DNA from: Ranitomeya imitator
Taxonomy: Eukaryota
Assembly (NCBI RefSeq): GCF_032444005.1
Contig: NC_091285.1
Coordinates: 13,020,001 to 13,084,000, forward strand
Direction: 5' to 3'
Length of the DNA stretch: 64,000 bases
This document shows positions 287 through 64,000 of the stretch, piece by piece (the first letter of the stretch is position 1; each line of letters starts with the position of its first letter). A program made the position numbers and the translations under genes. The notes below the pieces were generated by a model. The model made no database searches, was not told the origin of the DNA, and saw only the letters and a program-made list of their open reading frames with translations.

Positions 287-430
287 GCGTATGCTATAAT
301 TGACAGACTGATCTGCAGATCTGGTTCTCACATTGTAATCACTCCGAGCAGGAGGTCACTGGGGAGAGGAATCGGGTTTCTGACTATTTTTAGGGTCATC
401 ATGGTAGAAGCTGGAAAAAAAACAAAATAA

Positions 431-580
431 GCGGGAAATTCAAATTCACTAACAGTTCTGTGCTTGGCCAATCAGCAGAGGAAGGGGCGGAGCTAACTAT
501 GCTATTTAATTTACATCCCTGCCAATGAAACGTGTCATCGCTGCAGTTCTCTTTCTGGTCCACTCACGGACTATATAAAT
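431..580 (+). promoter_or_regulatory. H4 promoter: E2F/CDE+CHR-like GCGGGAAATTCAAA, CCAAT, GC box, H4 site II-like TTTCTGGTCC, TATA
   Basis: Motifs in this order upstream of all three H4 copies (also ~10271-10420 and ~55667-55817). Confidence 0.8.
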
Positions 581-617
581 GAGGACTGAGCACTCATTAG
601 TCATAGCTTTCTGCTGA

Positions 618-929
<312 letters not shown>

Positions 930-954
930 GGTCTCTGTTCTGCTAAAACACAAA

Positions 955-995
955 GGCTCTTCTAAGAGCCCCCCACATCTTCTGAGGAGAAGCTA
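955..995 (+). terminator. Histone 3' stem-loop and HDE-like purine tract of the H4 pseudogene
   Basis: GGCTCT-TCTA-AGAGCC at 955-970 followed by GAGGAGAAGCT. Confidence 0.9.
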
Positions 996-1748
996 CAGCT
1001 GCCGGGGCGGAGGGGAAGGGGCTGCTGATAGCACTGTGCTGGGATGACTGCAGCTGGGAACATTGCAGGCTCTAATGGGTTAACACTGAGGGTCTTGGGG
1101 GTTAAGGAATCTGGTGCTGTGTGGGGGTGGATCCATAGTACTATTTGGTGTTCATGTGTTGTATACTGCAATATTTGGGGAAGAACAGAATATCAGGAAT
1201 ATACAGCGCTATATGGAGGGTATACAGCACAGTGTGGAAAGCGTATAGGCATCAATAGCACAATTTGTGTATCCGGCACTAGATGAACGGGATTGTGAAG
1301 GAAACCATTTTGTAATCCACCTTGTTCCCTGAATTAACCATGTACATGGACTTTACTCCAAGCATCTCCCAACCTTGAAGAACAAGTTCTGGACTCTGTA
1401 TGACGGCAGGCCATATCCATTGTGCTTGTCAGGATCACCCTGAACACTTACAATTAATTTGCATACTTGTCTATATAATCCTGGGTGAGTCTAAATAAGC
1501 AGAAATTTACATTATGCGCAAAATAATAGAAAAAAGCTGAATCCTCACAATAGCCTTTATTTCCATATATACAGAGGCGCTGGGAGCTGCACACTCAATT
1601 CCAAATGAAAACCTAGATAGATAAACATATCTATAGATAGATATATCTATGTATAGATAGATATCTCTATAGATATAGATCTATCTATATCCATCTGTCA
1701 ATTGAATCTATATCTAAATCTATCTATCGATAGAAAAAATCTGCTTTA

Positions 1749-1932
1749 GGCCGAGGTCACAATTTACGAGAAACTTGCACACGTCTCGCACCTCAATACC
1801 CGGTACTTGGACAGGAGCGTCCAGCTGCATAGAAATACATGGAGCCGCACAGTCCGGTGCAGAGTGCCAGTTGCAGTGTTGGGTATTGAGGCGAGAGACT
1901 CGTGCAAGTGTCTCGCAAGTGTGACCCCGGCC
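1749..1932. mobile_element. PIF/Harbinger-type hairpin MITE
   Basis: GGCCG(A/G)GGTCACA inverted termini, TTA/TGA flanks; paralogues at ~12008-12180 and ~56997-57180. Confidence 0.65.
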
Positions 1933-2340
1933 TGAAACACCATATCTTTTTAATTTTTAAAAAAAATTTGCGTGGGCTCCTGTGCAATTTTCAAGTCCTG
2001 AGTGGGAAAGCCAGCGACTGGGGGTCGATGTTTATAGCCTAGGAAGCAGGTAATACTCATGGCCTCCTCCCAGGCTATGAATATCAGCCCAAAACTGATG
2101 TGGGGTCCCCCTATATTTTATAGCCAGAAAGGCTACTCATACAGCTGCGGGCTGATATTCATAGCCTAGAGAGGAGTCATGGATATTGCCCCCCCTGCTG
2201 CAAATACCAGCCCACAACCGCTCCAGAAATGGCGCATCTATAAGATGCGCCAATTCTGGCACTTAGCTCCTCTCTTCCCACTGCCCTGTAACAGTGGGAT
2301 ATGGTGTAATAAGGGGTTAATGTCACCTTTGTATTGTAAG

Positions 2341-3123
2341 TAGTGTTGAGCGATACCGTCCGATATTTGAAAGTATCGGTATCGGCCGATATCCGAAAAA
2401 TATCAGATATCGCCGATATCCGATACCAATACAAGTCAATGGGACACAAATATCGGAAGGTATCCTCTATGGCAGAGGTCCCCAACTCCAGTCCTCAAGG
2501 CCCACCAACAGGTCATGTTTTCAGGATTTCCTTTGCATTGCACAGGTGATGCAATTATTACCTGGGCAAGACTAAGGAAATCCTGAAAACATGACATGTT
2601 GGTGGGCCTTGAGGACTGGAGTTGGGGACCCCTGCTCTATGGTTCCCAGGGTCTGAAGGAGAGGAAACTCTCCTTCAGGCCCTGGGATCCATATTCATGT
2701 GTAAAAGAATACAAAATATTGATATACTTACCCTCGGACGCGCCCTGGTTGTAACCGCTGCAACCGCCATGATTCCCTTCCTAAGAATGAGCGCGTAAAG
2801 GACCTTCGATGACGTCGCGGCTTGTGATTGGTCGCGTGACCGCTCATGTGACATCTCACGCGACCAATCACAAGCCGCAACGTCATCGAAGGTCCTTCAC
2901 ACGCTCATTCTTAGGAACAGAAGCATGGCGGTTGCAGCGGTTACAACCAGGGCGCATCCGAGGGTGAGTATATCAATATTTTTTATTCTTTATTTTACAC
3001 ATCAATCTTCATCCCGATACCGATTCCCGATATCGCAAAAATATCGGAACTCGGTATCGGAATTCCGATACCGCAAATATCGGCCGATACCCGATACTTG
3101 CGGTATCGGAATGCTCAACACTA
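2341..3123. mobile_element. Non-autonomous hAT (TAGTGTTGAGC termini)
   Basis: TIRs, perfect 8-bp TSD ATTGTAAG, CCGATAC subterminal repeats; empty paralogous site at 13196-13203. Confidence 0.93.
2473..2634. mobile_element. 162-bp hAT-type MITE nested in the previous element
   Basis: CAG(A/G)GGTCCCCAACTCCAGTCCTCAAGG TIRs, 8-bp TSD CTCTATGG; absent from the relative at 15519. Confidence 0.9.
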
Positions 3124-4234
3124 ATTGTAAGGTGACATTAAGCCCGGTTAATAATGGAGAGGCGTCAATAAGAAACCTATACATTACTAATCCTATAGTA
3201 GTGAAAGAGTTTTAAAAAAAAGACACAGCCAGAAAAAAGTATTTTAATATTCGTAATTTCACCATACTTACCATACTCGATTGCCCGTAAAAAATAAAAA
3301 TAATAAACCAACTGTATACTCCCTGTCTGACGCCGTCCAATTAATAATGAGTGTCCCATGACGATGTCCCCTATAGAACAATGACATCGGGTGATGTCAC
3401 TGCTCTATAGGCCTCCAGTGACACACGACAGGAGACAATGGCTCCTGCAGTGCATCACTGAAGAGGTTACTTTAGTTCATTGCTCTCATTTTATGGCAAT
3501 GCTGTGTGGGAATTTTCCCATGCAGCAGTGCCGAAAGTGACAGTATGATGAACAACACTGTACTCACAGCGGCGGAGGGATACAGTGCAGAAGGATACCT
3601 TCAGTCATTGTATCCCGGATACCCTGGAGAGTGGTCGCATCTGCCGATGTGACAGATCTCCACGGGAGATCATCGTGGGACACTCGTTATTAAAAGGATT
3701 ACTGCAGATCAGGGAGTATATTGTTGGTTTATTATTTTAATATTTTTTGCAGGTAATCGATGGCTTCTCTGGGACAAGGTGATTGATGAGTATGTACTCT
3801 ATGTTGTATGTTCTGTATGTGTTTTGCTTTTTTTTTTACACTTGAACACAGGAGCCTGATGATGGGACTATACTGTCCCATTATCCGGCTACCTGTCACT
3901 GTAGCAGGCATAGCCGGATGGGACAAGTGGTAGTAGTCCCATCGGTTGATGCCTGCCTACATACAGCCTCACACAAACACAGCACTGCACACACAGCCCC
4001 GCGATCCCCGCGCAGTCACGCACACACACAGCTCCGTGATCCCCGCACAGCCCTGCAGACCCCCGCACAGTCACACACACAGCCCCGGAGACCACCGCAG
4101 GCACCCACAAACACCCGCACACAGACACACACATCTTCACCGCACACACACAGTCTCCGCCCACACACTCTTCCCCCTCCCGATCTGCAGCAGTTCTCGC
4201 ACCCAACTCCCCAGCATAAATATGTGATTCTTAA

Positions 4235-5430
4235 CCCCTTACCGGCATTGGACGTACTATACCGTCCGATGCTGGCTCCCCTGCTTTGATGCAGGGCTCC
4301 GCGGTGAGCCCGCATCAAAGCCGGGACATGTCAGCTGTTTTGAACAGCTGACATGTGCCCGTAATAGGCGCGGGCAGAATCGCGATCTGCCCGCACCTAT
4401 TAACTAGTTAAATGCCGCTGTCAAACGCAGACAGCGGCATTTAACCACCGCTTCCGGCCGGGCGGCCGGAAATGACGTCATCGCCGACCCCCGTCACATG
4501 ATCGGGGTCGGCGATGCTTGTATATTGTAACCATAGAGGTCCTAGAGACCTCTATGGTTACTGATGACCGGTGGCTGTGAGCGCCACCCTGTGGTCGGCG
4601 CTCACAGCACACCTGCAATTCTGCTACATAGCAGCGATCAGCAGATCGCTGCTATGTAGCAGAGCCGATCGTGCTGTGCCTGCTTCTAGCCTCTCATGGA
4701 GGCTATTGAAGCATGGCAAAACTTAAATCAATAAAAAAAATCAAATCTATGCATATTTGGTATCGCCGCGCTCCGAATCGCCCGATCAATTAAAAAAAAG
4801 TATTAACCTGATCGCTAAACAGCGTAGCGGGAAAAAAATTCGAAACGCCAGAATTATGTTTTTTTTTTGTCGCCGCGACATTGCATTAAATTGCAATAAC
4901 GGGCGATCAAAAGAAAGTATCTGCACCGAAATGCTATCATTAAAAACGTCATCTCGGCATGCAAAAAATAAGCCCTCAATCGACCCCAGATCATGAAAAA
5001 TGGAGACGCTACGAGTATCGGAAAATGGCGCACTTTTTTTTTTTTTTTTTAGCAAAGTTTGGAATTTTTTTTCACCAGTTAGATAAAAAATAACCTAGTC
5101 ATGTTAGGTGTCTATGAACTCGTACTGACCTGGAGAATCATAATGACAGGTCATTTTTAGCATTTAGTGAACCTAGCAAAAAAGCCAAACAAAAAAAACA
5201 GTGTGGGATTGCACTTTTTTTGCAATTTCACCGCACTTGGAATTTTTTTCCCGTTTTCTAGTACACGACATGCTAAAACCAATGATATCGTTCAAAAGTA
5301 CAACTCGTCCCGCAAAAAATAAGTCCTCACATGGCCAAATTGACGGAAAAATAAAAAAGTTATGGCTCTGGGAAGGAGGGGAGCGAAAAACGAACACGGA
5401 AAAACGAAAAAATCCCTGGTCATGAAGGGG
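4235..5430. mobile_element. Non-autonomous piggyBac-type element
   Basis: TTAA|CCCCTT...AAGGGG|TTAA; empty site near 14221; longer copy at 59549-60825. Confidence 0.85.
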
Positions 5431-5450
5431 TTAAGAAATTCTTTATGTCT

Positions 5451-5491
5451 TTGCCTGATGAAGAGACCTGTGTAGTCTGGAAAGTTTGCAA
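5451..5491 (+). ncRNA. Degenerate minimal type I hammerhead ribozyme motif (Penelope-like fragment)
   Basis: TTGC-CTGATGA-A-GAGAC..GTCTG-GAAA-GTT-T-GCAA; mismatches in stems II and III. Confidence 0.5.
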
Positions 5492-5771
5492 TTTGTTACC
5501 CTCTTTTCAGTTAGCCTCTGCCTCCAGTGTTCTGCTGGTTGTAGCCAGAGATTGGCTGTTAATTTTCAGCAGAGTCTGCTGGTTCTGATTGGAGCTCTCT
5601 GCAATTTCTTGCTTATATTCCCCTGATATTACGCACCCTTCACCCCCCAGAGCGGTGGAGGCTCCTGATCAATGATGAATTAAAGACTGATCTATTTCTA
5701 GGTCTGAATCTCACATTGTCATTAATGGAGAAAGCGATCAACAACATGGAGATACATGAACAAAGCACAGT

Positions 5772-6325
5772 ATGGAGAGTATATAGCACTATATGGGGGT
5801 ATACAGAGGATATGGAGGGTATATAACACTATATGGGGGTATACAGCAGGATATGGAGGGTATATAACACTATATGGGGGTATATAGCACTATATGGGGG
5901 TATACAGCAGGATATGGAGGGTATATAACACTATATGGGGGTATACAGCAGGATATGGAGGGTAAATAGCACTATATGGGGGTATACAGCAGGATATGGA
6001 GGGTATATAACACTATATGGGGGTATACAGCAGGATATGGAGGGTATATAGCACTATATGGGGGTATACAGCAGGATATAGAGGGTATATAGCACTATAT
6101 GGGGGTATAGAGCAGGATATGGAGGGTATATAGCACTATATGAGGGTATACTGCAGGATATGGAGGGTATATAGCACTATATGGGGGTATAGAGCAGGAT
6201 ATGGAGGGTATATAGCACTATATGGGGGTATACAGAAGATATAGAGGGTATATAATAACACTATATGGGGGGTATATAGCAGGATATGGAATGTATATAA
6301 TAGCACTATATGGGGGGTATACAGA
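5772..6325 (+). repeat. 41-bp minisatellite (dimer of ~20-21-bp subunits) GCACTATATGGGGGTATACAGCAGGATATGGAGGGTATATA
   Basis: ACACT recurs at 5826 and 5867 (41-bp period). Confidence 0.92.
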
Positions 6326-6333
6326 GACTATAA

Positions 6334-6730
6334 CCCTTTTCTCCCCTGACCAGTGATGAGGACAGGACTCAGGTCTGTGATTAGATGTAACGTCCTCGCG
6401 ATAAAAGCGGGAAAATGACAGGAAAAAGTGCGGGAAATTCAAAATCCCCAACAGTTCTGTGCTCCGCCCACATGTGAGGAGAAGCCGCGGCTCCTTCTGC
6501 TGGGGGAGGGGCTGGTGATCGCCCGGTGCCCGGATGGCTGCAGTCTGCTCTGCGGGAGCTGGAAACATCGGGCACTAAAGGGTTAACACCAAGTGTCTGC
6601 GGGGAAGTGAGCCTGTGGGTGGAGCCATAGCCCTACTGAGTGCTGATTGGCTGAGCGCTGAATATGAAATTCCCGCCCAACGGCTGATAGTTTCTCCCGC
6701 TCTTTGTTCTCCTCAGTAACACGTGGTGTC
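6334..6730 (+). other. H4-ghost element 1: fused H4 5' and 3' flanks plus GC-box/CCAAT/E2F/E-box module
   Basis: AACAGTTCTGTGCT (H4 upstream) joined through CCG to CCCACAT..GAGGAGAAGC..GGGTTAACAC (H4 downstream). Confidence 0.75.
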
Positions 6731-8092
6731 ATGGCGGCGGCTCCTGACAGACTGAGGGGATCTGGTAGATTTCATGTGAATGTATATTATACTTTTTGAT
6801 GAAAGATCATCCTATGGCCGTATATACGGCTTTATATGGGGTTATGTAGCGCTATATGTTGTGTGATACTATAGAATACGTGTATTGAGGACATAATGCA
6901 ATTATACTGTGTACCAGGCAATTAAGCTCTATATATCCTCAATAGACCTCTGTATACTGCCATATGGTGCTTTATATCCCCCTCCATATTCTGTATACCC
7001 CTATATCGTGTTATAGACTGATGTATATGGCAAAGTAGGTATTAATGTCTGTATACTGCCACATTGTGCTATATGCCCATATATTGCTGAATACCTTATT
7101 ATTTATATAGCATCGTTGATTCCATGGTGCTGTACACGAGAAGGGGTTACATACAAATTACAGATATCACTAACAGTAAGCAAACTAACAATGACTGACT
7201 GATACAGAGGGGCGAGGACCCTGCGGGCTTACATTCTACATATGTTGTGCTATATAGTGTATATATCTCTATAGAACAGTATTCCTCCATAGTCACATAT
7301 ATGGCACCATTTATTCCATGGCGCTTTACACGTGAAAAGGGGCAAATATAGATAAGTACAATAAATATGCCTCATACACAATGCTATATTGATATGTACA
7401 GCCCATAATGATAATATATAGCACTATAGATAAGATATTGAGAACTATTTAGCACAATATGGCAGTATGCAGCACTAAATAGGAGTATTTGGTACTATAT
7501 GGGGAGAATACAGCACTATTTTGCCATATACAACGGTTTAACTATATGGGGGGTTTACAGAACAATATGGATTAATACAGCACTTAGTGATGTATGGTAT
7601 ACCACAGCATATTGCACTATACAGAGGGTATAAAGCACTATATAGGGGTACATGACATTATAGCAGTGAGATTATTGGGTTACATGACATTTTAGCCTAA
7701 TAATGGAATGTTGTGCTTCCTATGCCCCCTGATGTTCACACTGCCCCCCATATCCTGCACACACTGGATATATACATAGAGCGGCAGCTCTGGCCGCCCT
7801 GGAGGCTCCGACTCCGGAGGATAAGATGTAGAGAAGAACAGCCGCATGCAGCCATCAATCCTCCGGATCCTTCAAGCTAAACAAGGCTCTTATCCTTGTT
7901 TTATGTGGAGTGATGCTGTAATACAATATTACATGTATGAAACGTCACAATGATGGAAGTTACACGATAATCCCCACTGTGCCAAGCAATTATGGAGACA
8001 GGATTAACTGCAGCTATATCCCCCAATGCTACGCAAAATCTGTGCCATGTAACACATCCATACAGAACATCACAGCAGAGATCAGCGGTGTC

Positions 8093-8132
8093 AGCTCTTG
8101 TGATGACGGTGTGGGTGGCTCTGAGAAGAGCC
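8093..8132 (-). terminator. H2A stem-loop and HDE
   Basis: Reverse complement GGCTCT-TCTC-AGAGCC (8117-8132) followed by CAAGAGCTG. Confidence 0.9.
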
Positions 8133-8167
8133 TTTGGGTTGTGTGGATGATACGGGGTCAGTGTCGC

Positions 8168-8820
<653 letters not shown>

Positions 8821-9265: not shown

Positions 9266-10336
9266 TCTGCTCCGTGCTCTGCACCCACAACCCAAAGGCT
9301 CTTCTAAGAGCCACCCACCCCATCTACATCAGAGCTGTGGCTGCTTTTGTTCTACTCTTTTCAATGGGGAACATGTCGCTGCACTGACCGGCATCTCATT
9401 TGTTCAGAGGCTCAGACGAGGGTCTGTTTCTATCCTTAGAGCACAAGTTGGAGGGAGATTAGAGGAAGGTGATATAAAGATGGGGAGAATGATGATGTTG
9501 ATAGTGGTCTATAGAGCGGATGTGGAATGCTGGGAATGGTCTGGCCATAAAGGGGCAGATGCCGGCCACCATTAATGCCCTATTGCACTTCACTGGATCC
9601 TGTTCTCCCAGAGTGCGGAGTCCTAGTTCTCTGGTTACGTTGTTCTGCTGACAATAGGTGGAGATGGGCTGTGTAAGGGCTTTCAGTGTTAGTGATGTTT
9701 CCAGCAGTTTCTATTAAATCTCATTGGAGCTCTGTGTGTTCTCGCTGATATTCCTGATATTACACACCCTCTGCTCTGCAAACAGCTGAAGGCACAGGGT
9801 CAATAAGCTCCTAAAGGATGATCTATTTGTAGGTCTGAATCTCACATTAATGGAGCAGTAGTGTCTTGACACAGGCGCTGCTGCTACGTGAGCAGAGCAC
9901 AATACGGAGGGTATAAAGCACTTTGAGGGTTTATAGCACTACATGGAGGAATACAGTAGTATATAATAATTTACATAGCGCCAACATATTCCGCAGCGCT
10001 TTACAGTTTAACAGTTTCAAACACAATTTCAAACACAACAGTCATAAATAACAACGTTAACAAGAATACAATAATTGGAGCAAAATAAAAAATGGAGGTT
10101 AAACACCACTATGTAGATGGTGAGAATACAGCACTAAAATTGACAGACTGATCTCCAGATCTGGTTCTCACATTGTAATCACTCGGAGCAGGAGGTCACT
10201 GGGGAGAGGAATCGGGTTTCTGACTATTTTTAGGGTCATCCTGGTAGAAGCTGGAAAAAAAACAAAATAAGCGGGAAATTCAAATTCACTAACAGTTCTG
10301 TGCTTGGCCAATCAGCAGAGGAAGGGGCGGAGCTGA

Positions 10337-10780
<444 letters not shown>

Positions 10781-12612
10781 GATCTCTGTTCTGCTGAAAC
10801 ACAAAGGCTCTTCTAAGAGCCCCCCACATCTTCTGAGGAGAAGCTACAGCTGCTGGGGAGGAGGGGAAGGGGCTGCAGATAGTACTGTGCTGGGATGACT
10901 GCAGCTGGGAACATTGCAGGCACTAATGGGTTAACACTGAGGGTCTTGGGGGGGTTAAGGAATCTGGTGCTGTGTGGGGTGGATCCATAGTACTATTTGG
11001 TGTTCATGTCAGGAATATACAGGCTATATGGAGGGTATACAGCACAGTGTGGAAAGCGTATAGGCATCAATAGCACAATTTGTGTATACGGCACTAGATG
11101 AACGGGATTGTGAAGGAAACCATTTTATCATCCACCTTGTTCCCTGAATTAACCATGTTCATGTACTTTACTCCAAGCATCCCCCAACCTTGAAGAACAA
11201 GTTCTGGACTTTGTATGAGGGCAGGCCATATCCATTGTGCTTGTCAGGATCACCCTGAACACTTACAATTAATTTGCATACTTGTCTATATAATCCTGGC
11301 TGAGTCTAAATAAGCAGAAATTTACATTATGCGCAAAATAATAGAAGAAATCTGAATCCTCACAATAGCCTTTATTTCCATATATACAGAGGCGCTGGGA
11401 GCTGCACACTCTATTACAGATGAAAACATGAACAAAATATCAGTTCTTAAGCTGAAAATGAAGAAGGAATAATCGGATGCTCAACAAAAAATACCAGTGT
11501 GTGCAATTTCATTTACAAACTTGAATATTTACAGCATAAACTGAAACTTGATTTACAGGGTCTGTGCACACGTTGCAGATTTGCCTGTGGAATTTTCTGT
11601 GCAGATTCTTCCCTCTCTTGCCAGAAAATGCAGGTGTGGATTTGCTGCTTTTTTGCTGTTTTTTTTTTATGCGTTTTTTTCTTCATGCAGATTTGTATTC
11701 GTTTTTGAAATCTAAATACAGATCTATTATTGAACAAAAAAAAAAAAAGTGATTTCTGGTCCAACCTCCCCTTTAACATTTGTCCAACCCACACTCCATT
11801 ACACACACAGATAGACAAGATAGATAAATAGAAGGAATGAGATAGACATATATATCTATAGATACAGTAGATATCTCTATAGATATATATATATATATAT
11901 CTATAGATCTATCTCTATCTAAATCTATCTACAGTATAAATCTTTCTATCGATACATCTATCCATCTATAGATCTGTCTATCTATAGATAGAAAAAAACT
12001 GCTTTAGGCCGGGGTCACAATTTACGAGAATCTCGCACCTCAATACCCAACACTGCCTCGGACAGGAGCGTTCAGCTGCATAGAAATACATGGAGCCGCA
12101 CACTCCGGTCCAGAATGCCACTTGCAGTGTCGGGTATTAAGGCGAGAGACTCGTGCAACTTTCTAGTAAGTGTGACCTCAACCATAAACGCAATATGTTT
12201 AATAAAAAAAAAAAAAATTGTGTGGGCTCCCGCGCAATTTTCAAGTCCAGAGTGGGAAAGCCAGCGACTGGGGGTCGGTGCTGATAGCCTAGGAAGCAGG
12301 TAATACCCACGGCCCCCTCCCAGGCTATGAATATCAGCCCACAGCTGTCTGCGCGGCCTTTACTGGCTATTAAAATAGGGGGACCCCAAAAAAATGATGT
12401 GGGGTCCCCCTCTATTTTATAGCCAAAAAGGCTATGCAGACAGCTGCGGCCTGATATTCATAGCCTAGAGAGGAGCCATGGATATTGCCCCCCCCCAGCT
12501 TCAAATACCAGCCGACAACCGCCTCAGAAATGGCGCATCTGTAAGGCGCGCCAATTCTGGAACTTAGCCCCTCTCTTCCCACTGCCCTGTAGCGGTGGGA
12601 TATGGGGTAAGA

Positions 12613-14835: not shown

Positions 14836-15518
14836 TTTTTAAGCAGCAATGTAGGGCCGGCTCCAGGTTTTCGTGGGCCCTAGGCAGAAAAGTCTCAGTG
14901 GGCCCTTTCTCCCGCTCTTTGTTCTCCTCTGTGTAACAGGTGGTGCACACTGCTATATAGAGGGACAAAACATTATATGGCCGTATATGGGGCTATATGG
15001 AGGGTGTATGGTGCTATTTGGGCATAGACCGCATCATAGGGAGGAATACAGCACGATATGCAGTGTATGAGACATTAATACAGCACCATATGGGGTGTGA
15101 CACTCTATGGCGATATATAGCAGGATACATAGAAGGTATTCAGCACTATACAGTAATATATAACTTAAGTGTAAGGACATATACAGCACTATTTGGAGGG
15201 TATATAGCACTATATAGGGATATTTGGCACTATATGTGGAAAAAACACTATGTTCGTATACACATCAGTTAATAGCTATATGGAGGGATTTCAGCCTTAT
15301 ATGGATGTATACAGTGCAGCACTCCCCTACATCTCCCTCAATTCTGTTTATCAGCCTACCCGCTTGTTTCACTCTGCAAGTGACTTTTGACTCATATCCG
15401 TACTAATCCGTACCTCCCACTCCCAACTTCTCATGAGTTGCACTAATTTTCTGGAATGCTCTACCCCAAGAAATCAGGGATGATCACAAGTTATAGAGTT
15501 TAGACAATCCCTCGCGAC

Positions 15519-18714: not shown

Positions 18715-19188
<474 letters not shown>

Positions 19189-20580: not shown

Positions 20581-21445
20581 TAATTATTATACATTTCTAT
20601 AGCCGCATTTATTCCATGGCGCTTTACATGTGAAAGGGGCGAATATAGACAAATACAATAGACCTGAGTAACACAAGGCGCACAGGAGCACAGAGGGAGG
20701 GAGGACCCGGCCTTATTTATAGAGGGGAAACATCTACAATACGGAATCCAGTTTGCGGCACATTATAAAAATCAAATAAAAAAAAAAAAGCGGCAACACC
20801 TCCCGCTGTCACCTTCCACTGATCCCAGAGCGCTGGGCCCTAGTGCCGCCAGACTCCAGTGGTCTCCTGGTAATAGGCGCAGATGAGCTGTTAACTCTTT
20901 CAGCGCTTAGCGATATTTTCAGCAGTTTCTCATTGTTCTGTTCAAAATGTTCTAATGAAATAACGCAGCGGTCACTCCCCGGACCACAGGCTCCTGATCA
21001 ATGATGAGCTCACAATCACTGATCTATGTCTGGGTCTGAATCCCACTGGTTTATCGCAGCCGGAGCTACAAGAGCAAAGCACAGTACGGAGGGTGTATAG
21101 CGCTATACAGGGGTATAATATGGATTTATACAGCACTATATGGGGGTATATAGCACTATATGGAGTATACAGCAGGATATGGGGGTATAAAGGAGGAGAT
21201 GCAGCACAATAGAAGGGTATACAGCAAGATATGGAGGTTATACGGCAATATATGGGGTATAAAGGAGGATATGAAGGGTACATAGCATTATATTATGAAG
21301 TATACAGCAGGATATGGAGGGTATAAAGGAGGCTATGGAGGAGATACAGCACAATATAGCGGTATACAACAAGATATGGAGGTTATACGGCAATATATTG
21401 GGGTATACAGTAGGATATGGGGTATACACATATAGTTCTGTATCT

Positions 21446-21862
21446 GTGATTTCTCGGTCTCACGCCGCCATTGTTCCGAGCAGGAGGTCACCGGGGAGGA
21501 CTCAGGTCTGTGACTAGATGTAACGTCCTCGCGATAAAAGCGGGAAAATGACAGGAAAAAGTGCGGGAAATTCAAAATCCCCAACAGTTCTGTGCTCCGC
21601 CCACATGTGAGGAGAAGCCGCGGCTCCTGCTGCTGGGGGAGGGGCTGGTGATCGCCCGGTGCCCGGATGGCTGCAGTCTGCTCTGCGGGAGCTGGAAACA
21701 TCGGATACTAAAGGGTTAACACCAAGCGTCTGCGGGGAAGTGACCCTGTGGGCGGAGCCATAGCCCTACTGAGTGCTGATTGGCTGAGCGCTGAATATGA
21801 AATTCCCGCCCAACGGCTGATAGTTTCTCCCGCTCTTTGTTCTCCTCAGTAACACGTGGTGC
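21446..21862 (+). other. H4-ghost element 2
   Basis: Includes CCGAGCAGGAGGTCAC shared with H4 upstream; same junction (~21596). Confidence 0.78.
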
Positions 21863-23659: not shown

Positions 23660-24211
<552 letters not shown>

Positions 24212-24544: not shown

Positions 24545-24655
24545 TGCCTGTGGGCGGAGCCATGGTGCTGATTGGCTGAGCACTGAATTTGAAATTCCCA
24601 CACTATGGCTGATAGTTTCTCCCTCTTTGTTCTCAGTGTAACACATGGCGGCTCT
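24545..24655. promoter_or_regulatory. Stand-alone GC-box/CCAAT/CHR-E2F module downstream of H3
   Basis: CCTGTGGGCGGAGCCAT..GCTGATTGGCTGAGC..TTTGAAATTCCC..CTCTTTGTTCTC, matching the ghost 3' module. Confidence 0.6.
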
Positions 24656-25057
24656 CGGGCTGTAAGTGAATATGTAATATATTCAGCACTAAAGCACGGT
24701 GCACTACACTATTTGGGGGCTAAACTGCATCATATTGCTGTAGAGATCTATATGGAGGTATATAGTAATAGAGTAATTAGCATAGAAAGTTTTATACGGG
24801 GGTATAACACAAATTGTATTTATATAGCACTAACATATTTAGCAGCACTTTACAGAGTAAAAGTTCCAGGCGTGCAGTCCTGCTCACAATCTATAAGGAA
24901 ATAGGATACAATAAGTAGAACGTGCTCATCATGTGCAGTCCGGCCATCATAATAAATTGGGTTTTTCATATAAAGCTGCATGATCCGGTAATCAATCAGT
25001 ATCTGCAACTACAGTTACCAAGTGCTATTGGGTATATGGAGACCAATAAGAGGGACT

Positions 25058-28378: not shown

Positions 28379-28777
<399 letters not shown>

Positions 28778-34790: not shown

Positions 34791-34984
34791 TCCATACCCC
34801 TTTGCTCCCCTGACCAGTGATTTCTCTGTCTCACAGTCATTAATAGTGTTGAGCATTCCGATACCGCAAGTATCGGGTATCGGCCGATATTTGCGGTATC
34901 GGAATTCCGATACTGAATTCCGATACTTCCCGCGTATCGGATACCGGAATCGGAAGTTCCCAGAATTCAAATTGAACGCAGCAG

Positions 34985-50098: not shown

Positions 50099-50379
50099 TA
50101 TAGCGGTATACAGCACTGAGGGTTTACTGCAGTATATGGAGATAAAGCAGCACAATATGATAAGGATTTCCAGACGTATATAGCACTATATGGGGGTATA
50201 AAACAAGATATGGAGAGTATATAGAACTACATGTCGGTATACAGCAGGATATAGAGTATATAGCACTATGGGGTTATACAGCAGGATATGGAGAGTATAT
50301 AGCACTATATGAGGGTGTACGGCAGGATATGGAGGATATATAATAGCACTATATGGGGGTATACAGCAGGATATAATCC

Positions 50380-50800
50380 TTTGCTCCCCTGACCAGTGAT
50401 GATCTCAGTGATTTCTCTCGGTCTCACGCCGCCATTGTTCCGAGCAGGTCGTCACCGGGGAGGACTCAGGTCTGTGACTAGATGTAACGTCCTCGCGATA
50501 AAATGACAGGAAAAAGTGCGGGAAATTCAAAATCCCCAACAGTTCTGTGCTCCGCCCACATGTGAGGAGAAGCCGCGGCTCCTGCTGCTGGGGGAGGGGC
50601 TGGTGATCGCCCGGTGCCCGGATGGCTGCAGTCTGCTCTGCGGGAGCTGGAAACATCGGAATCTAAAGGGTTAACACCAAGTGTCTGCGGGGAAGTGACC
50701 CAGTGGGCGGAGCCATAGCCCTACTGAGTGCTGATTGGCTGAGCGCTGAATATGAAATTCCCGCCCAACGCTCTTTGTTCTCCTCAGTAACACGTGGTGT
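50380..50800 (+). other. H4-ghost element 3
   Basis: Same sequence and junction (~50551), preceded by 41-bp repeats. Confidence 0.78.
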
Positions 50801-51017
50801 GATGGCGGCGGCTCCTGACAGACTGAGTGGATCTTGTAGATAACTCACTATGCGACAGTGTGTACAGCATATGGCGGTATATACCGCGCTATATGGGGGT
50901 TATATCCCAATATATTTTACTCCCTCATCTAGTGCTATCAATTCCTCAGCGTTAGAGACGTTTTCATCAATGTGCACATTAGGGATCACACTAGTCCTCA
51001 GCATTAGAGCTTTGTGT

Positions 51018-51328: not shown

Positions 51329-51769
<441 letters not shown>

Positions 51770-51770
51770 C

Positions 51771-52938
51771 TAGTGATGTGACGTTCATGAACGAGCCGAC
51801 TCAAAGAGCCGGCTCTTCACTGTGAACGATATGAGCCGGCACCTATCAGTGAGCCGCTTGTTATCTAGTGGCTCTCTGCTCTCCTTCCCTTCCCTGTGCT
51901 GCTGGTGGTGGAGGGGGAGGAGAGGAGCCAGGAGAGACTGTGCTGGAGGGGGAGAGAGGAAAGCTGCTGCTGAAAGTCCTGTAGGTGAGGAGTCGGCAGC
52001 AGCGCACAGTGTTATCTCATTCACCGGCCAATACAGAAGCAGGATGTAAATGAAGGCAGAACATGTGACCACAGAGCAGCCAGTCACAGCTCAAGTTTCA
52101 CTTGTCCTCATGCACTGTCTTCTTACATCTTTGGCTACTTTCACACTAGCGTTAACTGCAATCCATCACAATGCGTCATTTTGCAGAAAAAACGCATCCT
52201 GCAAAAGTGTTTGCAGGATGCGTTTTTTCTGCATTGACTAACATTACGCAACGGATTGCCACACGTCGCAACTGTCGCGCGACGGTTGCGCCGTGTTGTG
52301 GCAGACCGTCGGCCGCAAAAAACGTTCCATGTAACGTTTTTTGCAGCCGACGGATCGTCTTTCCGACCGCGCATGCGCGGCCAGAACTCCGCCCCCACCT
52401 CCCTGCACCTCACAATGGGGCAGCGGATGCGCTGAAAAGCAGCATCCGCTGCACCCGTTGTGCGGCGGAGACAACGCTAGCGTCGGTAACCTCGGCCTGA
52501 CGCACTGCGATGGGCCGAGCCCGACGCTAGTGTGAAAGATGCCTTTATTGGCATCCTGCCCTGTGTTCAGTAGCAACATCAGTCCCTTCAGAGAGAATTT
52601 TCTCCAAAACAGGGCAGATAATCACAGAGAGAAGAAACCGGATCAGCCCGTCCAAACTGAGGCACTTAGTGTTTCTTAATGCCAATTTGTCCTAATGACC
52701 TTCTAAAAATGTTTCACTGTTAAGTTATACGGCTGTTTTGCACATTTTTTGCATTTGTTTGATGTTCTTATAATGAAAAATAATATAAACAATGTTAATC
52801 TGTTAACTAGAAGGTTTTGTGTCATTGTTTTGGTGAGATTACTGAAGAGCCGATTCAAGAGCCGAAAGAGCCGACTCTTCTTGCTGAGGCGAGCCGAAAG
52901 AGCCGATTCCCAAAAAAAACCCCGAAGTCCCATCACTA
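51771..52938. mobile_element. Non-autonomous hAT (TAGTGATG termini) between the H2A leader and its TATA
   Basis: TIR TAGTGATG/CATCACTA, TSD GTGAGCAC/GTGAGCGC, GAGCCG subterminal repeats. Confidence 0.9.
52133..52543. mobile_element. Harbinger-type MITE nested in the hAT
   Basis: GGC..CTTTCACACTAGCGT TIRs, TTT on both flanks. Confidence 0.8.
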
Positions 52939-53209
52939 GTGAGCGCTGCCTCCTGTGCCTTTTATAACCTACTGCTGCCCCGCCTCCTCTCCTGCCACTG
53001 GCTAAATCTGAAGTCACTAATGCAAAAAAAGACTTGTGGAAGCACCAATGAGCTGCAGTGGGTGGAGATAATTATATGAACATTGGTCACATGACTTTCT
53101 CACCCAATAGAACAGTGATCTGACAGCATTGCTCATTTGCATGGCCGCTCTATAAATACGGCCGCTCTGGGAGGAGCAGGATCATTATTTTCTTTTCCAG
53201 TGAACTTGA

Positions 53210-53611
<402 letters not shown>

Positions 53612-55408: not shown

Positions 55409-55733
55409 CAGTTTCAAACACAATTTCAAACACACCAGTCATAAGTAACAACGTTAATAAGAATACAATAATTGGAGCAAAATAAAAAATGGAGGTTATA
55501 CACTACTATGTGGATGGTGAGAATACAGCACTATAGTTGACAGACTGATCTGCAGATCTGGTTCTCACATTGTAATCACTCGGAGCAGGAGGTCACTGGG
55601 GAGAGGAATCGGGTTTCTGACTATTTTTAGGGTCATCATGGTGGAAGCTGGAAAAAAAACAAAATAAGCGGGAAATTCAAATTCACTAACAGTTCTGTTC
55701 TTGGCCAATCAGCAGAGGAAGGGGCGGAGCTAA

Positions 55734-56177
<444 letters not shown>

Positions 56178-57644
56178 GGTCTCTGTTCTGCTAAAACAAC
56201 ACAAAGGCTCTTCTAAGAGCCCCCCACATCTTCTGAGGAGAAGCTACAGCTGCCGAGGAGGGGAAGGGGCTGCTGATAGTACTGTGCTGGGATGACTGCA
56301 GCTGGAAACATTGCAGGCTCTAATGGGTTAACACTGAGGGTCTTGGGGGTTAAGGAATCTGGTGATGTGTGGGGGTGGAGCCATAGTACTATTTGGTGTT
56401 CATGTGTTGTATACTGCAATATTTGAGGAAGAACAGAATATCAGGAATATACAGCGCTATATGGAGGGTGTACAGTACAGTGTGGAAAGCGTATAGGCAG
56501 CAATAGCACAATTTGTGTATACGGCACTAGATGAACAGGATTGTGAAGGAAGCCATTTTGTCATCCACCTTCTTCCCTGAATTTATCATGTACATGGACT
56601 TTACTCCAAGCATCCCCCATCCTTGAAGAACAAGTTCTGGACTCTGTATGAGGGCAGGCCATATCCATTGTGCTTGTCAGGATCACCCTGAATACTTACA
56701 ATTAATTTGCATACTTGTCTATATAATCCTGTGTGAGTCTAAATAACCAGAAATTTACATTATGCGCAAAATAATAGAAAAAAGCTGAATCCTCACAATA
56801 GCCTTTATTTCCATATATACAGAGGCGCTGGGAGCTGCACACTCTATTCCAAATGAAAACCTAGATAGATAAACATATCTATAGATAGATATATCTATGT
56901 ATAGATAGATATCTCTATAGATATAGATCTATCTATATCGATCTGTCAATTGAATCTATATCTAAATCTATCTATCGATAGAAAAAATCTGCTTTAGGCC
57001 GAGGTCACAATTTACGAGAAACTTGCACACGTCTCGCACCTCAATACCCGGTACTTGGACAGGAGCGTCCAGCTGCATAGAAATACATGGAGCCGCACAG
57101 TCCGGTGCAGAGTGCCAGTTGCAGTGTTGGGTATTGAGGCGAGAGACTCGTGCAAGTGTCTCGCAAGTGTGACCCCGGCCTGAAACACCATATCTTTTTA
57201 ATTTTTTAAAAAAATTTGCGTGGGCTCCTGTGCAATTTTCAAGTCCTGAGTGGGAAAGCCAGCGACTGGGGGTCGATGTTTATAGCCTAGGAAGCAGGTA
57301 ATACTCATGGCCTCCTCCCAGGCTATGAATATCAGCCCAAAACTGTCTGCGTGGCCTTTACTGGCTATTAAAATAGGGGGACCCCCCCCCAAAAAAAAAT
57401 GATGTGGGGTCCCCCTATATTTTATAGCCAGAAAGGCTACTCATACAGCTGCGGGCTGATATTCATAGCCTAGAGAGGAGTCATGGATATTGCCCCCCCT
57501 GCTGCAAATACCAGCCCACAACCGCTCCAGAAATGGCGCATCTATAAGATGCGCCAATTCTGGCACTTAGCTCCTCTCTTCCCACTGCCCTGTAACAGTG
57601 GGATATGGTGTAATAAGGGGTTAATGTCACCTTTGTATTGTAAG

Positions 57645-58437
57645 TAGTGTTGAGCGATACCGTCCGATATTTGAAAGTATCGGTATCGGATGGTATCGGC
57701 CGATATCCGAAAAATATCAGATATCGCCGATATCCGATACCAATACAAGTCAATGGGACACAAATATCGGAAGGTATCCTCTATGGCAGAGGTCCCCAAC
57801 TCCAGTCCTCAAGGCCCACCAACAGGTCATGTTTTCAGGATTTCCTTTGCATTGCACAGGTGATGCAATTATTACCTGGGCAAGACTAAGGAAATCCTGA
57901 AAACATGACATGTTGGTGGGCCTTGAGGACTGGAGTTGGGGACCCCTGCTCTATGGTTCCCAGGGTCTGAAGGAGAGGAAACTCTCCTTCAGGCCCTGGG
58001 ATCCATATTCATGTGTAAAAGAATACAAAATATTGATATACTTACCCTCGGACGCGCCCTGGTTGTAACCGCTGCAACCGCCATGATTCCCTTCCTAAGA
58101 ATGAGCGCGTAAAGGACCTTCGATGACGTCGCGGCTTGTGATTGGTCGCGTGACCGCTCATGTGACATCTCACGCGACCAATCACAAGCCGCAACGTCAT
58201 CGAAGGTCCTTCACACGCTCATTCTTAGGAACAGAAGCATGGCGGTTGCAGCGGTTACAACCAGGGCGCATCCGAGGGTGAGTATATCAATATTTTTTAT
58301 TCTTTATTTTACACATCAATCTTCATCCCGATACCGATTCCCGATATCGCAAAAATATCGGAACTCGGTATCGGAATTCCGATACCGCAAATATCGGCCG
58401 ATACCCGATACTTGCGGTATCGGAATGCTCAACACTA
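57645..58437. mobile_element. Non-autonomous hAT with nested MITE (57787-57948), duplicate of 2341-3123
   Basis: Same TIRs and TSDs ATTGTAAG and CTCTATGG. Confidence 0.93.
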
Positions 58438-60825: not shown

Positions 60826-60845
60826 TTAAGAAATTCTTTATGTCT

Positions 60846-60886
60846 TTGCCTGATGAAGAGACCTGTGTAGTCTGGAAAGTTTGCAA
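60846..60886 (+). ncRNA. Degenerate minimal hammerhead motif, duplicate of 5451-5491
   Basis: Same sequence as 5451-5491. Confidence 0.5.
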
Positions 60887-61785: not shown

Positions 61786-61794
61786 TATAACCCT

Positions 61795-62185
61795 TTTCTC
61801 CCCTGACCAGTGATGAGGACAGGACTCAGGTCTGTGATTAGATGTAACGTCCTCGCGATAAAAGCGGGAAAATGACAGGAAAAAGTGCGGGAAATTCAAA
61901 ATCCCCAACAGTTCTGTGCTCCGCCCACATGTGAGGAGAAGCCGCGGCTCCTGCTGCTGGGGGAGGGGCTGGTGATCGCCCGGTGCCCGGATGGCTGCAG
62001 TCTGCTCTGCGGGAGCTGGAAACATCGGGCACTAAAGGGTTAACACCAAGTGTCTGCGGGGAGTGACCCTGTGGGCGGAGCCATAGCCCTACTGAGTGCT
62101 GATTGGCTGAGCGCTGAATATAAAATTCCCGCCCAACGGCTGATAGTTTCTCTCGCTCTTTGTTCTCCTCAGTAACACGTGGTGT
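61795..62185 (+). other. H4-ghost element 4
   Basis: Duplicate of 6334-6730; junction at 61920/61921. Confidence 0.75.
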
Positions 62186-63623
62186 CATGGCGGCGGCTCC
62201 TGACAGACTGAGGGGATATTGTAGATTCCATGTGACTGTATATTATACTTTTTGATGAAAGATCATCCTATGGCCGTATATACGGCTTTATATGGGGTTA
62301 TGTAGCGCTATATGTTGTGTGATACTATAGAATACGTGTATTGAGGACATAATGCAATTATACTGTGTACCAGGCAATTAAGCTCTATATATCCTCAATA
62401 GACCTCTGTATACTGCCATATGGTGCTTTATATCCCCCTCCATATTCTGTATACCCCTATATCGTGTTATAGACTGATGTATATGGCAAAGTAGGTATTA
62501 ATGTCTGTATACTGCCACATTGTGCTATATGCCCATATATTGCTGAATACCTTATTATTTATATAGCATCGTTGATTCCATGGTGCTGTACACGAGAAGG
62601 GGTTACATACAAATTACAGATATCACTAACAGTAAGCAAACTAACAATGACTGACTGATACAGAGGGGCGAGGACCCTGCGGGCTTACATTCTACATATG
62701 TTGTGCTATATAGTGTATATATCTCTATAGAACAGTATTCCTCCATAGTCACATATATGGCACCATTTATTCCATGGCGCTTTACACGTGAAAAGGGGCA
62801 AATATAGATAAGTACAATAAATATGCCTCATACACAATGCTATATTGATATGTACAGCCCATAATGATAATATATAGCACTATAGATAAGATATTGAGAA
62901 CTATTTAGCACAATATGGCAGTATGCAGCACTAAATAGGAGTATTTGGTACTATATGGGGAGAATACAGCACTATTTTGCCATATACAACGGTTTAACTA
63001 TATGGGGGGTTTACAGAACAATATGGATTAATACAGCACTTAGTGATGTATGGTATACCACAGCATATTGCACTATACAGAGGGTATAAAGCACTATATA
63101 GGGGTACATGACATTATAGCAGTGAGATTATTGGGTTACATGACATTTTAGCCTAATAATGGAATGTTGTGCTTCCTATGCCCCCTGATGTTCACACTGC
63201 CCCCCATATCCTGCACACACTGGATATATACATAGAGCGGCAGCTCTGGCCGCCCTGAAGGCTCCGACTCCGGAGGATAAGATGTAGAGAAGAACAGCCG
63301 CATGCAGCCATCAATCCTCCGGATCCTTCAAGCTAAACAAGGCTCTTATCCTTGTTTTATGTGGAGTGATGCTGTAATACAATATTACATGTATGAAACG
63401 TCACAATGATGGAAGTTACACGATAATCCCCACTGTGCCAAGCAATTATGGAGACAGGATTAACTGCAGCTATATCCCCCAATGCTACGCAAAATCTGTG
63501 CCATGTAACACATCCATACAGAACATCACAGCAGAGATCAGCGGTGTCAGCTCTTGTGGTGACGGTGTGGGTGGCTCTTAGAAGAGCCTTTGGGTTGTGT
63601 GGATGATACGGGGTCAGTGTCGC

Positions 63624-64000
<377 letters not shown>

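What the first reader, a model, noticed from the sequence alone, without database searches (positions are those of the whole stretch)
6334..6600. 'H4 ghosts': conserved elements made of H4 flanks with the gene cleanly missing
Four copies (6334, 21446, 50380, 61795) plus a stump (34797-34843) align to H4 upstream DNA (CCGAGCAGGAGGTCAC..GCGGGAAATTCAAA..AACAGTTCTGTGCT). They then jump to H4 downstream DNA (CCCACAT..GAGGAGAAGC..CTGCAG..GGAAACAT..GGGTTAACAC). The ~518 bp carrying core promoter, CDS and stem-loop (10305-10822) is replaced by CCG, which creates a GC box (CTCCGCCC). Ghosts follow the same spacer motif (GATCTAT.T.TAGGTCTGAATC) that precedes real H4 genes, so they occupy the H4 slot. 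They are near-identical to each other but clearly diverged from H4 flanks, and here they outnumber H4 genes. Inference: an old deletion product retained as a gene-less cell-cycle enhancer or ncRNA promoter, or an ancestral element into which H4 inserted.
Basis: partly seen in the sequence, partly recalled or inferred. Interest (0 to 1): 0.8.

Follow-up and report, generated by a model that had tools for sequence, protein, structure and literature searches.

The report
Gene-less histone H4 units in frog
In a frog histone gene cluster, several H4 positions hold only the H4 flanking DNA because one old 515-bp deletion removed the gene; the leftovers stay near-identical mainly by copying from one another, and a regulatory role is possible but unproven.

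Summary
Four ~400-bp elements (g1 6334-6770, g2 21446-21861, g3 50380-50841, g4 61795-62226) match H4 upstream DNA and then switch, flush, to H4 downstream DNA. The missing piece is H4b 10305-10819 (515 bp: CCAAT box, TATA, coding sequence, most of the 3' stem-loop). The "CCG filler" is one mismatch in continuing homology.

New points:
- g1 and g4 are the same slot in two copies of a 55-kb higher-order repeat.
- Two stumps cut by transposons exist (34797-34843, 14906-14945).
- The right third of each ghost is an inverted copy of the H4 distal promoter that still has its CCAAT box. This shows the gene was deleted, not inserted.

Cores are 97.6-98.8% alike, while spacer 600 bp upstream is only 76-87% alike. 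However, the two higher-order-repeat partners differ more in the core (1.7%) than in unique spacer (0-0.5%). That points to non-allelic gene conversion rather than simple purifying selection.

Ghosts are richer in GC and CpG than the homologous H4 flanks. They carry E2F-like, CCAAT and GC-box motifs in a palindromic layout. Contigs of putative RNA runs from several organisms contain them.

Verdict: the deletion relic is certain and conversion is likely; function is open (about 30%).

The parts
6334..6770 (+). Ghost g1, whole element. 6334-6363 is a 5' remnant shared with g3 and the stump; the core is 6364-6770.
6364..6463 (+). g1 left arm, homologue of the H4 distal promoter (H4b ~10200-10304). 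It has E2F-like TTTCCCGC on the minus strand at 6407-6414 and 6430-6437. A TTCAAA abuts the second site. The arm ends in AACAGTTCTGTGCT.
6463..6464 (+). Deletion junction, equal to H4b 10304|10820. The GC box CTCCGCCC lies at 6462-6469. The same junction is at 21596|21597, 50551|50552 and 61920|61921.
   Evidence: crossed unchanged by contigs of 4 runs
6464..6613 (+). g1 central part, homologue of the H4 3' flank (H4b 10820-~10965). It includes the purine-rich block GAGGAGAAGC (6476-6485) at the expected place of the histone downstream element, and GGGTTAACAC (6580-6589).
6614..6704 (-). g1 right arm, an inverted copy of the H4 distal promoter. It has a GC box (6617-6626, mutated in g1 and intact in g2-g4), a CCAAT box (ATTGG at 6646-6650), an E2F-like/TTCAAA-like block (6660-6677) and a second E2F-like block (6691-6700).
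6705..6770 (+). g1 tail. It has a CACGTG E-box (6720-6725). 6729-6770 is an extension shared by g1, g3 and g4 but not by g2.
21446..21861 (+). Ghost g2, the most complete copy. It has the full H4 upstream homology including GAGCAGGAGGTCAC.
50380..50841 (+). Ghost g3. It has 9-nt and 17-nt deletions that remove both outer E2F-like blocks.
61795..62226 (+). Ghost g4, the higher-order-repeat partner of g1.
34797..34843 (+). 5' stump of a further ghost. It is cut off where the giant hAT element noted by the scan starts.
14906..14945 (+). 3' stump of a further ghost (90% to the g2 end). What looks like a Tc1/mariner fragment precedes it.
10305..10819 (+). The segment of H4 unit H4b that is missing from ghosts. 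It holds the CCAAT box, GC box, GGTCC/TATA core promoter, coding sequence 10469-10780, and stem-loop bases 10806-10819.
24545..24660 (-). Diverged copy (80%) of the right arm, about 300 bp 3' of the H3 gene. Its CCAAT and GC boxes are intact and its E2F-like CpGs have decayed.
5689..5710 (+). Spacer motif that marks the slot. It also occurs at 9820, 21021, 30309, 54869 and 61084.

Best explanation
Each ghost is a histone H4 gene unit that lost its gene.

**Origin (shown).** One old, blunt 515-bp deletion removed everything from just upstream of the CCAAT box to inside the 3' stem-loop. It joined the H4 distal promoter directly to the H4 3' flank.

**Ancestral layout (shown by alignment).** The ancestral H4 unit already carried an inverted copy of its own distal promoter downstream of the 3' flank. 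That copy is intact in ghosts and decayed in present H4 units.

**Spread (shown by slot homology).** The deleted unit was then multiplied along with the cluster's repeat unit.

**Near-identity (inferred).** The copies are kept about 98% alike by non-allelic gene conversion among ghosts. This is inferred from identity that does not depend on the age of the duplication. The conversion is GC-biased, so ghosts drifted to higher GC and CpG than the H4 flanks.

**Function (inferred).** On this reading the ghosts are relics that need no function of their own. Their dense E2F-like, NF-Y and Sp1-type sites may still bind factors and keep them open.
For: **Deletion.**
- Two-part flush homology.
- The stem-loop is found by Rfam in H4b (31.7 bits) and is absent in the ghost even at E<=10.
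- Polarity comes from the inverted paralogue. The reverse complement of the right arm scores 45 against the H4 promoter, versus 25 +/- 5 for shuffles (3 of 1000 reach it). The forward control is not significant. The reverse complement against the ghost's own left arm scores 47 versus 20 +/- 4 (0 of 1000).

**Slot homology.**

**Gene conversion.**
- Cores are 97.6-98.8% alike in every pairing.
- Pre-slot spacer of the same units is 76-87% alike.
- The two copies of the 55-kb repeat differ by 0-0.5% in unique spacer, by 1.7% (7 of 406) in the ghost, and by 2.3-4.5% in the H4 unit.
- Variants are shared with contigs of other runs.

**GC bias.** There are 41 sites with G/C in the ghost and A/T in the H4 flank, against 12 the other way (p=8e-5). 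GC-biased conversion in multi-copy DNA is documented (PMC8981503; general theory in PMC3924837).

**Tolerance of damage.**
- g3 lost both outer E2F-like blocks, and g1 has a GC-box mutation.
- g1 and g4 lost about 58 bp at the 5' side.
- Transposons truncated two further copies.
- H4 genes here are decaying in other ways too: an 11-bp frameshift in H4a and R3L in H4b.
Against: - H4 flanks also undergo conversion, yet they are CpG-poor: 3 CpG against 21-22 in the homologous ghost part, and none in the 181-bp 3' flank. Biased conversion alone does not explain this contrast.
- Only 7 of 20 ghost-specific CpGs face TG or CA in H4.
- The ghost core is as uniform as the coding sequences and more uniform than the H2A-H2B promoter (92.5-94.7%).
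- Runs labelled as probable RNA from coded organisms A, B and C hold the ghost but not the H4 3' spacer of the same cluster.
- Three exact 14-mers are shared with the H4 upstream region despite about 25% divergence. The chance that shuffled match/mismatch states give a second-longest exact run of at least 14 is 0.035.
Confidence: 0.55

Rival explanations
1. The ghosts began as deletion relics but are now functional. They would be a ~365-bp CpG-island-like, palindromic cluster of E2F-like, CCAAT (NF-Y) and GC-box (Sp1/KLF) sites. This cluster would act as a TATA-less promoter of a non-coding transcript. Alternatively it would act as an S-phase enhancer or factor-recruiting element for neighbouring histone genes.
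For: - The core meets the formal CpG-island criteria: GC 0.56-0.57 and CpG observed/expected 0.67-0.74 over ~400 bp. The homologous H4 flanks score 0-0.47.
- TTTSSCGC motifs are enriched in the window (20 against 4.8 expected) and sit in ghosts and H4 upstream regions.
- Three motif pairs are nested in mirror order around ~6550.
- Core boundaries are sharp, and cores are ten-fold more alike than spacer 600 bp away.
- Contigs in 14 probable-RNA runs of at least 3 coded organisms cover the core at 93-97% identity. The H4 3' spacer is missing from those organisms' runs.
- Few differences between runs fall in 6430-6473 or 6634-6717.
Against: - The higher-order-repeat partners differ more in the ghost than in neutral spacer.
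- Individual motifs are deleted or mutated in single copies, and a 22-nt deletion in a run X15 contig removes the first E2F-like site.
- No core promoter is recognisable.
- The putative exon and splice donor after the element are not conserved in g2.
- Library types are guesses, and contigs have no strand or ends. The tool itself says transcription is not shown.
- A CpG ratio of 0.7 is not extreme here: the window median is 0.54.
- There is no constant partner gene. g1, g3 and g4 precede H2A, and g2 precedes H3.
Confidence: 0.3
2. The ghost is the original empty site, and the H4 gene with its core promoter inserted into it.
For: The two states differ by one clean block of 515 bp.
Against: - The inverted paralogue in the right arm, and its copy 3' of H3, have the upstream block contiguous with the CCAAT box as in filled units.
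- No target-site duplication or terminal repeats flank the block.
- The 3' break lies inside the stem-loop, so the ghost keeps its last two bases and the downstream processing block. Those make sense only next to a histone gene.
Confidence: 0.02
3. The ghost is a mobile element (MITE-like) that happens to share sequence with the H4 flanks.
For: - Boundaries are sharp, copies are near-identical, and internal inverted repeats are present.
- The folding z-score is about -2.3 on both strands.
Against: - The inverted repeats are internal and nested, not terminal. No target-site duplications are present.
- Every copy sits in the same slot behind the same spacer motif and 41-bp array.
- Homology to the H4 flanks is collinear over the whole length.
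- No Rfam or tRNA-like hit was found.
Confidence: 0.03

Closest known systems
Histone pseudogenes within clusters (birth-and-death evolution of histone genes)
   Same: A histone gene copy inside a cluster that has lost its function. Such pseudogenes are described in vertebrate clusters (review PMC13525598). The same window shows other routes of H4 decay: a frameshift and a missense change.
   Different: Usual pseudogenes keep a damaged coding sequence. Here the whole transcribed part and the core promoter are gone, only the flanks remain, and the empty unit has itself become a homogenised multi-copy family.
Concerted evolution by non-allelic, GC-biased gene conversion (e.g. arms of sex-chromosome palindromes, PMC8981503; theory PMC3924837)
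   Same: Identity among copies is independent of duplication age. There is a sharp drop of identity at the edge of the homologous tract, and a G/C gain relative to the non-converting relative.
   Different: The converting unit is a ~400-bp non-coding relic rather than a gene or a long palindrome arm. The conversion events themselves were not observed, only inferred.
Spacer promoters and enhancer repeats in the Xenopus ribosomal DNA intergenic spacer (from general knowledge)
   Same: Copies of promoter sequence without a gene, repeated in the spacer of a tandem gene cluster. This shows such copies can be functional.
   Different: Ghosts keep only the distal H4 promoter, in both orientations, and lack the core promoter. 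No initiation or enhancer activity has been shown.
Orphan CpG islands / non-methylated islands of vertebrates (from general knowledge)
   Same: A short GC- and CpG-rich patch with Sp1, NF-Y and E2F-type motifs that is not attached to an annotated gene.
   Different: The methylation state is unknown. CpG enrichment is moderate for this window. Enrichment could come from biased conversion.
Solo LTRs (analogy only)
   Same: The flanking parts of a unit persist after the internal part is lost.
   Different: Solo LTRs arise by recombination between direct repeats. Here the junction is blunt with no repeat, so the mechanism differs (end joining or similar).

Membership tests
Replication-dependent histone H4 gene unit | H4 coding sequence | tested here: not met
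   No H4 coding sequence lies between the flanks. The central part has no H4 relic on either strand.
Replication-dependent histone H4 gene unit | Core promoter (CCAAT, GGTCC element, TATA) upstream of the gene | tested here: not met
   H4b 10305-10468 is absent from the left arm. A CCAAT box exists only in the inverted right arm.
Replication-dependent histone H4 gene unit | 3' stem-loop | tested here: not met
   Rfam RF00032 scores 31.7 bits in H4b. The ghost has no hit at E<=10. Only the last 2 bases of the stem-loop remain.
Replication-dependent histone H4 gene unit | Homologous 5' and 3' flanks in the H4 slot of the repeat unit | tested here: met
Processed (retro)pseudogene | Transcribed region present, promoter and flanks absent | tested here: not met
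   The reverse pattern holds: flanks are present and the transcribed region is absent.
Histone orphon | Solitary histone gene outside the cluster | tested here: not met
   There is no gene, and the elements lie inside the cluster between H2A-H2B pairs.
Multi-copy family under concerted evolution (gene conversion) | Identity among copies independent of the age of the duplication, with recent duplicates more diverged in the family member than in unique flanks | tested here: met
   Cores are 97.6-98.8% alike in all pairs. Pre-slot spacer is 76-87% alike. The higher-order-repeat partners differ 1.7% in the core against 0-0.5% in the flanks.
CpG island (Gardiner-Garden and Frommer criteria) | At least 200 bp, GC at least 0.5, CpG observed/expected at least 0.6 | tested here: met
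   About 400 bp, GC 0.56-0.57, observed/expected 0.67-0.74. About thirty other stretches of the window also pass.
CpG island (functional sense) | Unmethylated in the germline | not testable with these tools
   No methylation data were available.
E2F / CDE-CHR cell-cycle promoter | E2F consensus TTTSSCGC | tested here: met
   Two exact sites per complete ghost and one per H4 upstream region.
E2F / CDE-CHR cell-cycle promoter | Canonical CDE, 4-nt spacer, CHR (TTYGAA) in that order near a start site | tested here: not met
   By inspection TTTGAA directly abuts TTTCCCGC with the CHR-like hexamer first. No start site is known.
E2F / CDE-CHR cell-cycle promoter | Binding of E2F or DREAM and cell-cycle dependent activity | not testable with these tools
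   This needs ChIP or reporter data.
TIR transposon / MITE | Terminal inverted repeats at the element ends plus target-site duplication, and dispersed insertion sites | tested here: not met
   Inverted repeats are internal and nested, with no duplication at the ends. All copies lie in one slot type.
Structured non-coding RNA gene | Match to a known family or strong, strand-specific structure | tested here: not met
   There are no Rfam or tRNA hits. The folding z-score is about -2.2 to -2.3 on both strands, which reflects the DNA palindrome.

The most novel reading that the evidence does not exclude
The gene-less H4 units are exapted. They would be a palindromic, unmethylated E2F/NF-Y/Sp1 platform made of two facing H4 distal promoters. 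This platform would be kept in several copies per repeat and would act as a gene-less S-phase enhancer. Alternatively it would be a nucleation site for the histone locus body, or the promoter of a non-coding RNA for the surrounding H2A-H2B and H3 genes. It would be conserved across related poison-frog-like species.
Probability: 0.25. Interest if true: 0.7.

Novelty: new variant of a known kind. Interest (0 to 1): 0.38.

Why it matters
Tandem histone clusters are a textbook case for how multigene families evolve. Here a unit that lost its gene did not fade away. It became a separate, homogenised, GC-enriched family that outnumbers the genes it came from.

This gives a clean natural test of how much uniformity, GC gain and CpG retention gene conversion alone can produce in DNA that codes for nothing.

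If the ghosts instead prove to be bound, unmethylated or transcribed, they would be gene-less promoter halves recycled as cluster-level regulatory elements. That bears on how histone loci are co-regulated in S phase.

Tried and rejected
- **Protein-coding reading.** The 116-aa minus-strand ORF across the core has no relative among 5.8 billion proteins. The ATG-GCG-GCG "exon" and splice donor after the element are not conserved in g2.
- **Known RNA.** No Rfam family, tRNA or strand-specific fold was found.
- **Transposon.** No terminal repeats or target duplications were found.
- **Relic of a second, convergent H4 gene.** The central 140 bp shows no similarity to the H4 gene on either strand.
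- **Simple CpG decay in the H4 flanks as the whole reason for the CpG contrast.** Only 7 of 20 ghost-specific CpGs face TG or CA.
- **CpG richness as proof of an island.** The window median observed/expected is 0.54 and many stretches pass the criteria.
- **Fetching ghosts from other frogs.**
  - The exact H2B protein led to the Ranitomeya imitator assembly and GCA_051348905.1, but their DNA could not be served.
  - The one locus served was L001. It has no ghost-like sequence.
  - A metagenome scan for the junction found nothing.
- **Conserved-block test.** A single exact 14-mer is not unusual at this divergence. Three of them is mildly so.
- **Earlier scan notes.** A look-up by sequence gave nothing.

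Full report
**Setting.** The window is part of a frog-type tandem histone cluster.
- It holds H2A(-)/H2B(+) pairs at about 8.1-9.3, 18.6-19.9, 28.3-29.6, 51.2-53.6 and 63.5+ kb.
- H3 lies at 23801-24211.
- Three H4 genes are present: H4a at about 620-950, H4b at 10469-10780 and H4c at 55866-56177.
- Window 294-8544 and 55531-64000 are two copies of one higher-order repeat with a period of about 55.2 kb. Ghost g1 and ghost g4, and likewise H4a and H4c, are therefore the same slot seen twice.
- The exact H2B protein of the window is also encoded in the Ranitomeya imitator assembly GCA_958301615.1, in GCA_051348905.1 and in GCA_933207985.1. This supports an anuran origin but does not name the species.

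All quoted motifs occur at the four stated places and at the three H4 units.
- g3 50439-50551 aligns to H4b 10183-10304 at 78% identity. The score is 68, against 17 +/- 2 for shuffles.
- The very next base, 50552, carries on at H4b 10820 at 77% identity. The score is 47, against 18 +/- 2.3.
- BLAST finds the same two pieces against all three H4 units.
- The missing block is therefore H4b 10305-10819, 515 bp. It holds the CCAAT box, GC box, GGTCC/TATA core promoter, 5' UTR, coding sequence and all but the last two bases of the stem-loop. Rfam places the stem-loop at 10801-10845 (31.7 bits) and finds nothing like it in the ghost.
Ghost CCGCCCACA faces H4 CCCCCCACA with one mismatch.
- I see no microhomology at the junction.
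- Contigs of four public runs cross the junction with no change, so the junction is not an assembly error.

**Slot homology.** The spacer motif occurs six times against none expected. About 170 bp around it align between ghost slots and H4 slots. A 41-bp tandem array lies between the motif and each ghost. Two further ghosts are reduced to stumps next to transposon sequence: 34797-34843 (5' end) and 14906-14945 (3' end). g1 and g4 carry a second deletion of about 58 bp at the 5' side, so only g2 is complete.

**A new structural point.**
- Their right arm (g1 6614-6704) contains a GC box, an inverted CCAAT box and two E2F-like blocks.
- These form three nested inverted pairs with the left arm. 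The pairs are 6403-6415 with 6692-6704, 6430-6446 with 6660-6676, and 6461-6472 with 6614-6625, the last a perfect 12-mer in g2 and g3.
- The reverse complement of the right arm aligns to the H4 promoter (score 45 against 25 +/- 5; 3 of 1000 shuffles reach it; the forward control is not significant). It also aligns to the ghost's own left arm (47 against 20 +/- 4; 0 of 1000).
- The right arm is thus an inverted paralogue of the H4 distal promoter.
- A more diverged copy lies about 300 bp 3' of H3, at 24545-24660. Present H4 units keep only a decayed beginning of it.
- In both inverted copies the TTCxGxGCT block runs straight into GCCAATCAGCA, as in real H4 genes. This gives the polarity: the ghost's left arm lost its CCAAT box. 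The H4 gene was deleted, not inserted.

**Why the ghosts are so alike.**
- Core identity is 97.6-98.8% in every pairing.
- That is as uniform as the histone coding sequences (97.7-99.5%). It is more uniform than the H2A-H2B promoter (92.5-94.7%) or the H2A 3' flank (89-93%).
- The homologous pre-slot spacer only about 600 bp upstream is 76-87% alike among ghost slots. The ghost slots are therefore old duplicates and the core is kept uniform.
- The two copies of the higher-order repeat give a direct test. Unique spacer differs by 0-0.5% per 400-bp bin. The ghost core differs by 1.7% (7 of 406), and the H4 unit by 2.3-4.5%.
- Purifying selection would make the core at most as diverged as its neutral surroundings. 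Exchange with other, slightly different family members makes it more diverged.
- Some variants are shared with contigs from other runs. For example, 6697 T is in both g4 and run X1.
- I conclude that non-allelic gene conversion is the main homogenising force. The ghost family and the H4-flank family (75-78% alike, about 0.28 substitutions per site) are now too different to convert each other.

**What remains unusual.**
- Ghosts have 21-23 CpGs (observed/expected 0.67-0.74, GC 0.56-0.57). The homologous H4 flanks have 3 CpGs, and the 181-bp H4 3' flank has none at similar GC (Fisher p=0.049 with GpC as control).
- Ghost-versus-H4 differences are strongly G/C-biased towards the ghost (41:12, p=8e-5).
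- GC-biased conversion is a known cause of such shifts (PMC8981503). But H4 flanks convert too, and only 7 of 20 ghost-specific CpGs face TG or CA. Long-term lack of methylation is therefore a live alternative.
- The contrast is tempered by the window's high median CpG ratio of 0.54.
- E2F consensus sites are enriched in the window and concentrated in ghosts and H4 upstream regions. These sites are homologous copies, not independent occurrences.

**Evidence from public runs.**
- Fourteen runs guessed to be RNA, from at least three coded organisms plus an unlabelled 2025 study, hold 6-25% of the ghost's 31-mers. Six runs of unknown type, from organism D, hold 23-35%.
- Laid on 6325-8060, their contigs cover just the core (6364 to 6717-6771) at 93-97% identity. 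They do not cover the unique flanks. A high-copy repeat at 7096-7369 dominates the depth.
- A control search with the H4 3' spacer (10822-11427) found the unlabelled study, organism D weakly, and organism F. It found none of the organism A, B or C runs.
- So the ghost is either transcribed or better conserved than the H4 spacer in those organisms. The library types are guesses and the contigs carry no strand. The tool itself warns that transcription is not shown.

**Signs of tolerance to damage.**
- g3 has lost both outer E2F-like blocks, and g1 has a mutated GC box.
- A contig of run X15 lacks 22 nt including the first E2F-like site.
- Transposons truncate two copies.

**Verdict.** The deletion origin is essentially certain. 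Homogenisation by gene conversion is well supported. Whether the relic has acquired a regulatory role stays open. I put that at about 30%, against about 55% for a functionless but conversion-maintained relic. I found nothing in the searched literature that describes gene-less histone units forming their own family; the review PMC13525598 mentions only ordinary pseudogenes. It is still a variant of known processes: gene loss within a cluster plus concerted evolution.

Noticed in passing
window 294-8544 vs 55531-64000: Two copies of a ~55.2-kb higher-order repeat of the histone cluster. They differ by 0.86% in substitutions overall. Members of multi-copy families (the H4 unit and the ghost) are several-fold more diverged than unique spacer.
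   Followed up: yes
window ~620-950 (H4a), 10469-10780 (H4b), 55866-56177 (H4c): Only H4c encodes canonical H4. H4a has an 11-bp deletion early in the coding sequence (frameshift) and a Gly-to-Val change. H4b has Arg3 replaced by Leu (CGC to CTC), and Arg3 is a known methylation site.
   Followed up: partly
window 24545-24660: An inverted H4-type distal promoter (GC box, CCAAT, decayed E2F-like site) sits about 300 bp downstream of the H3 gene. It is followed by ATGGCGGC and a good splice-donor-like GTAAGT. Its origin and meaning are unexplained.
   Followed up: partly
window 7096-7369: A short repeat with summed contig depth hundreds-fold above that of the ghost in three of the four laid runs (35-65-fold in run X6). 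It is likely a very abundant transposon fragment inserted between g1 and H2A.
   Followed up: no
window 5764-6324, 50176-50374, 61166-61781 and related arrays near 21118-21428: A 41-bp tandem array with no CpG at all always precedes the ghosts. Related TATATGGAGGG-type repeats fill much of the spacer, and one degenerate unit precedes real H4 genes.
   Followed up: partly
window 51765-52945: In one H2A-H2B pair the shared divergent promoter is split by about 1.2 kb of extra DNA, so H2A ends at 51733 and H2B starts at 53231.
   Followed up: no
window 8168-8566, 18715-19131, 28379-28768, 51329-51733: The H2A copies differ in their C-terminal tails (…SSKKSK, …[12 protein letters not shown], …ECSKSGKSK). 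Only two of the many histone 3' stem-loops reach the Rfam gathering score.
   Followed up: no
g3: window 50480-50490 and 50760-50770: The two deletions in g3 (9 nt and 17 nt) remove the two partners of the outermost inverted pair. This may be coincidence, structure-driven deletion or coupled loss.
   Followed up: no
locus L001 (GCA_933207985.1, OW240916.1): This distant anuran has a compact quintet H1(+), H3(+), H2A(-), H2B(+), H4(-). H4 is in the opposite orientation relative to H2B compared with the window, and there is no ghost-like sequence.
   Followed up: partly
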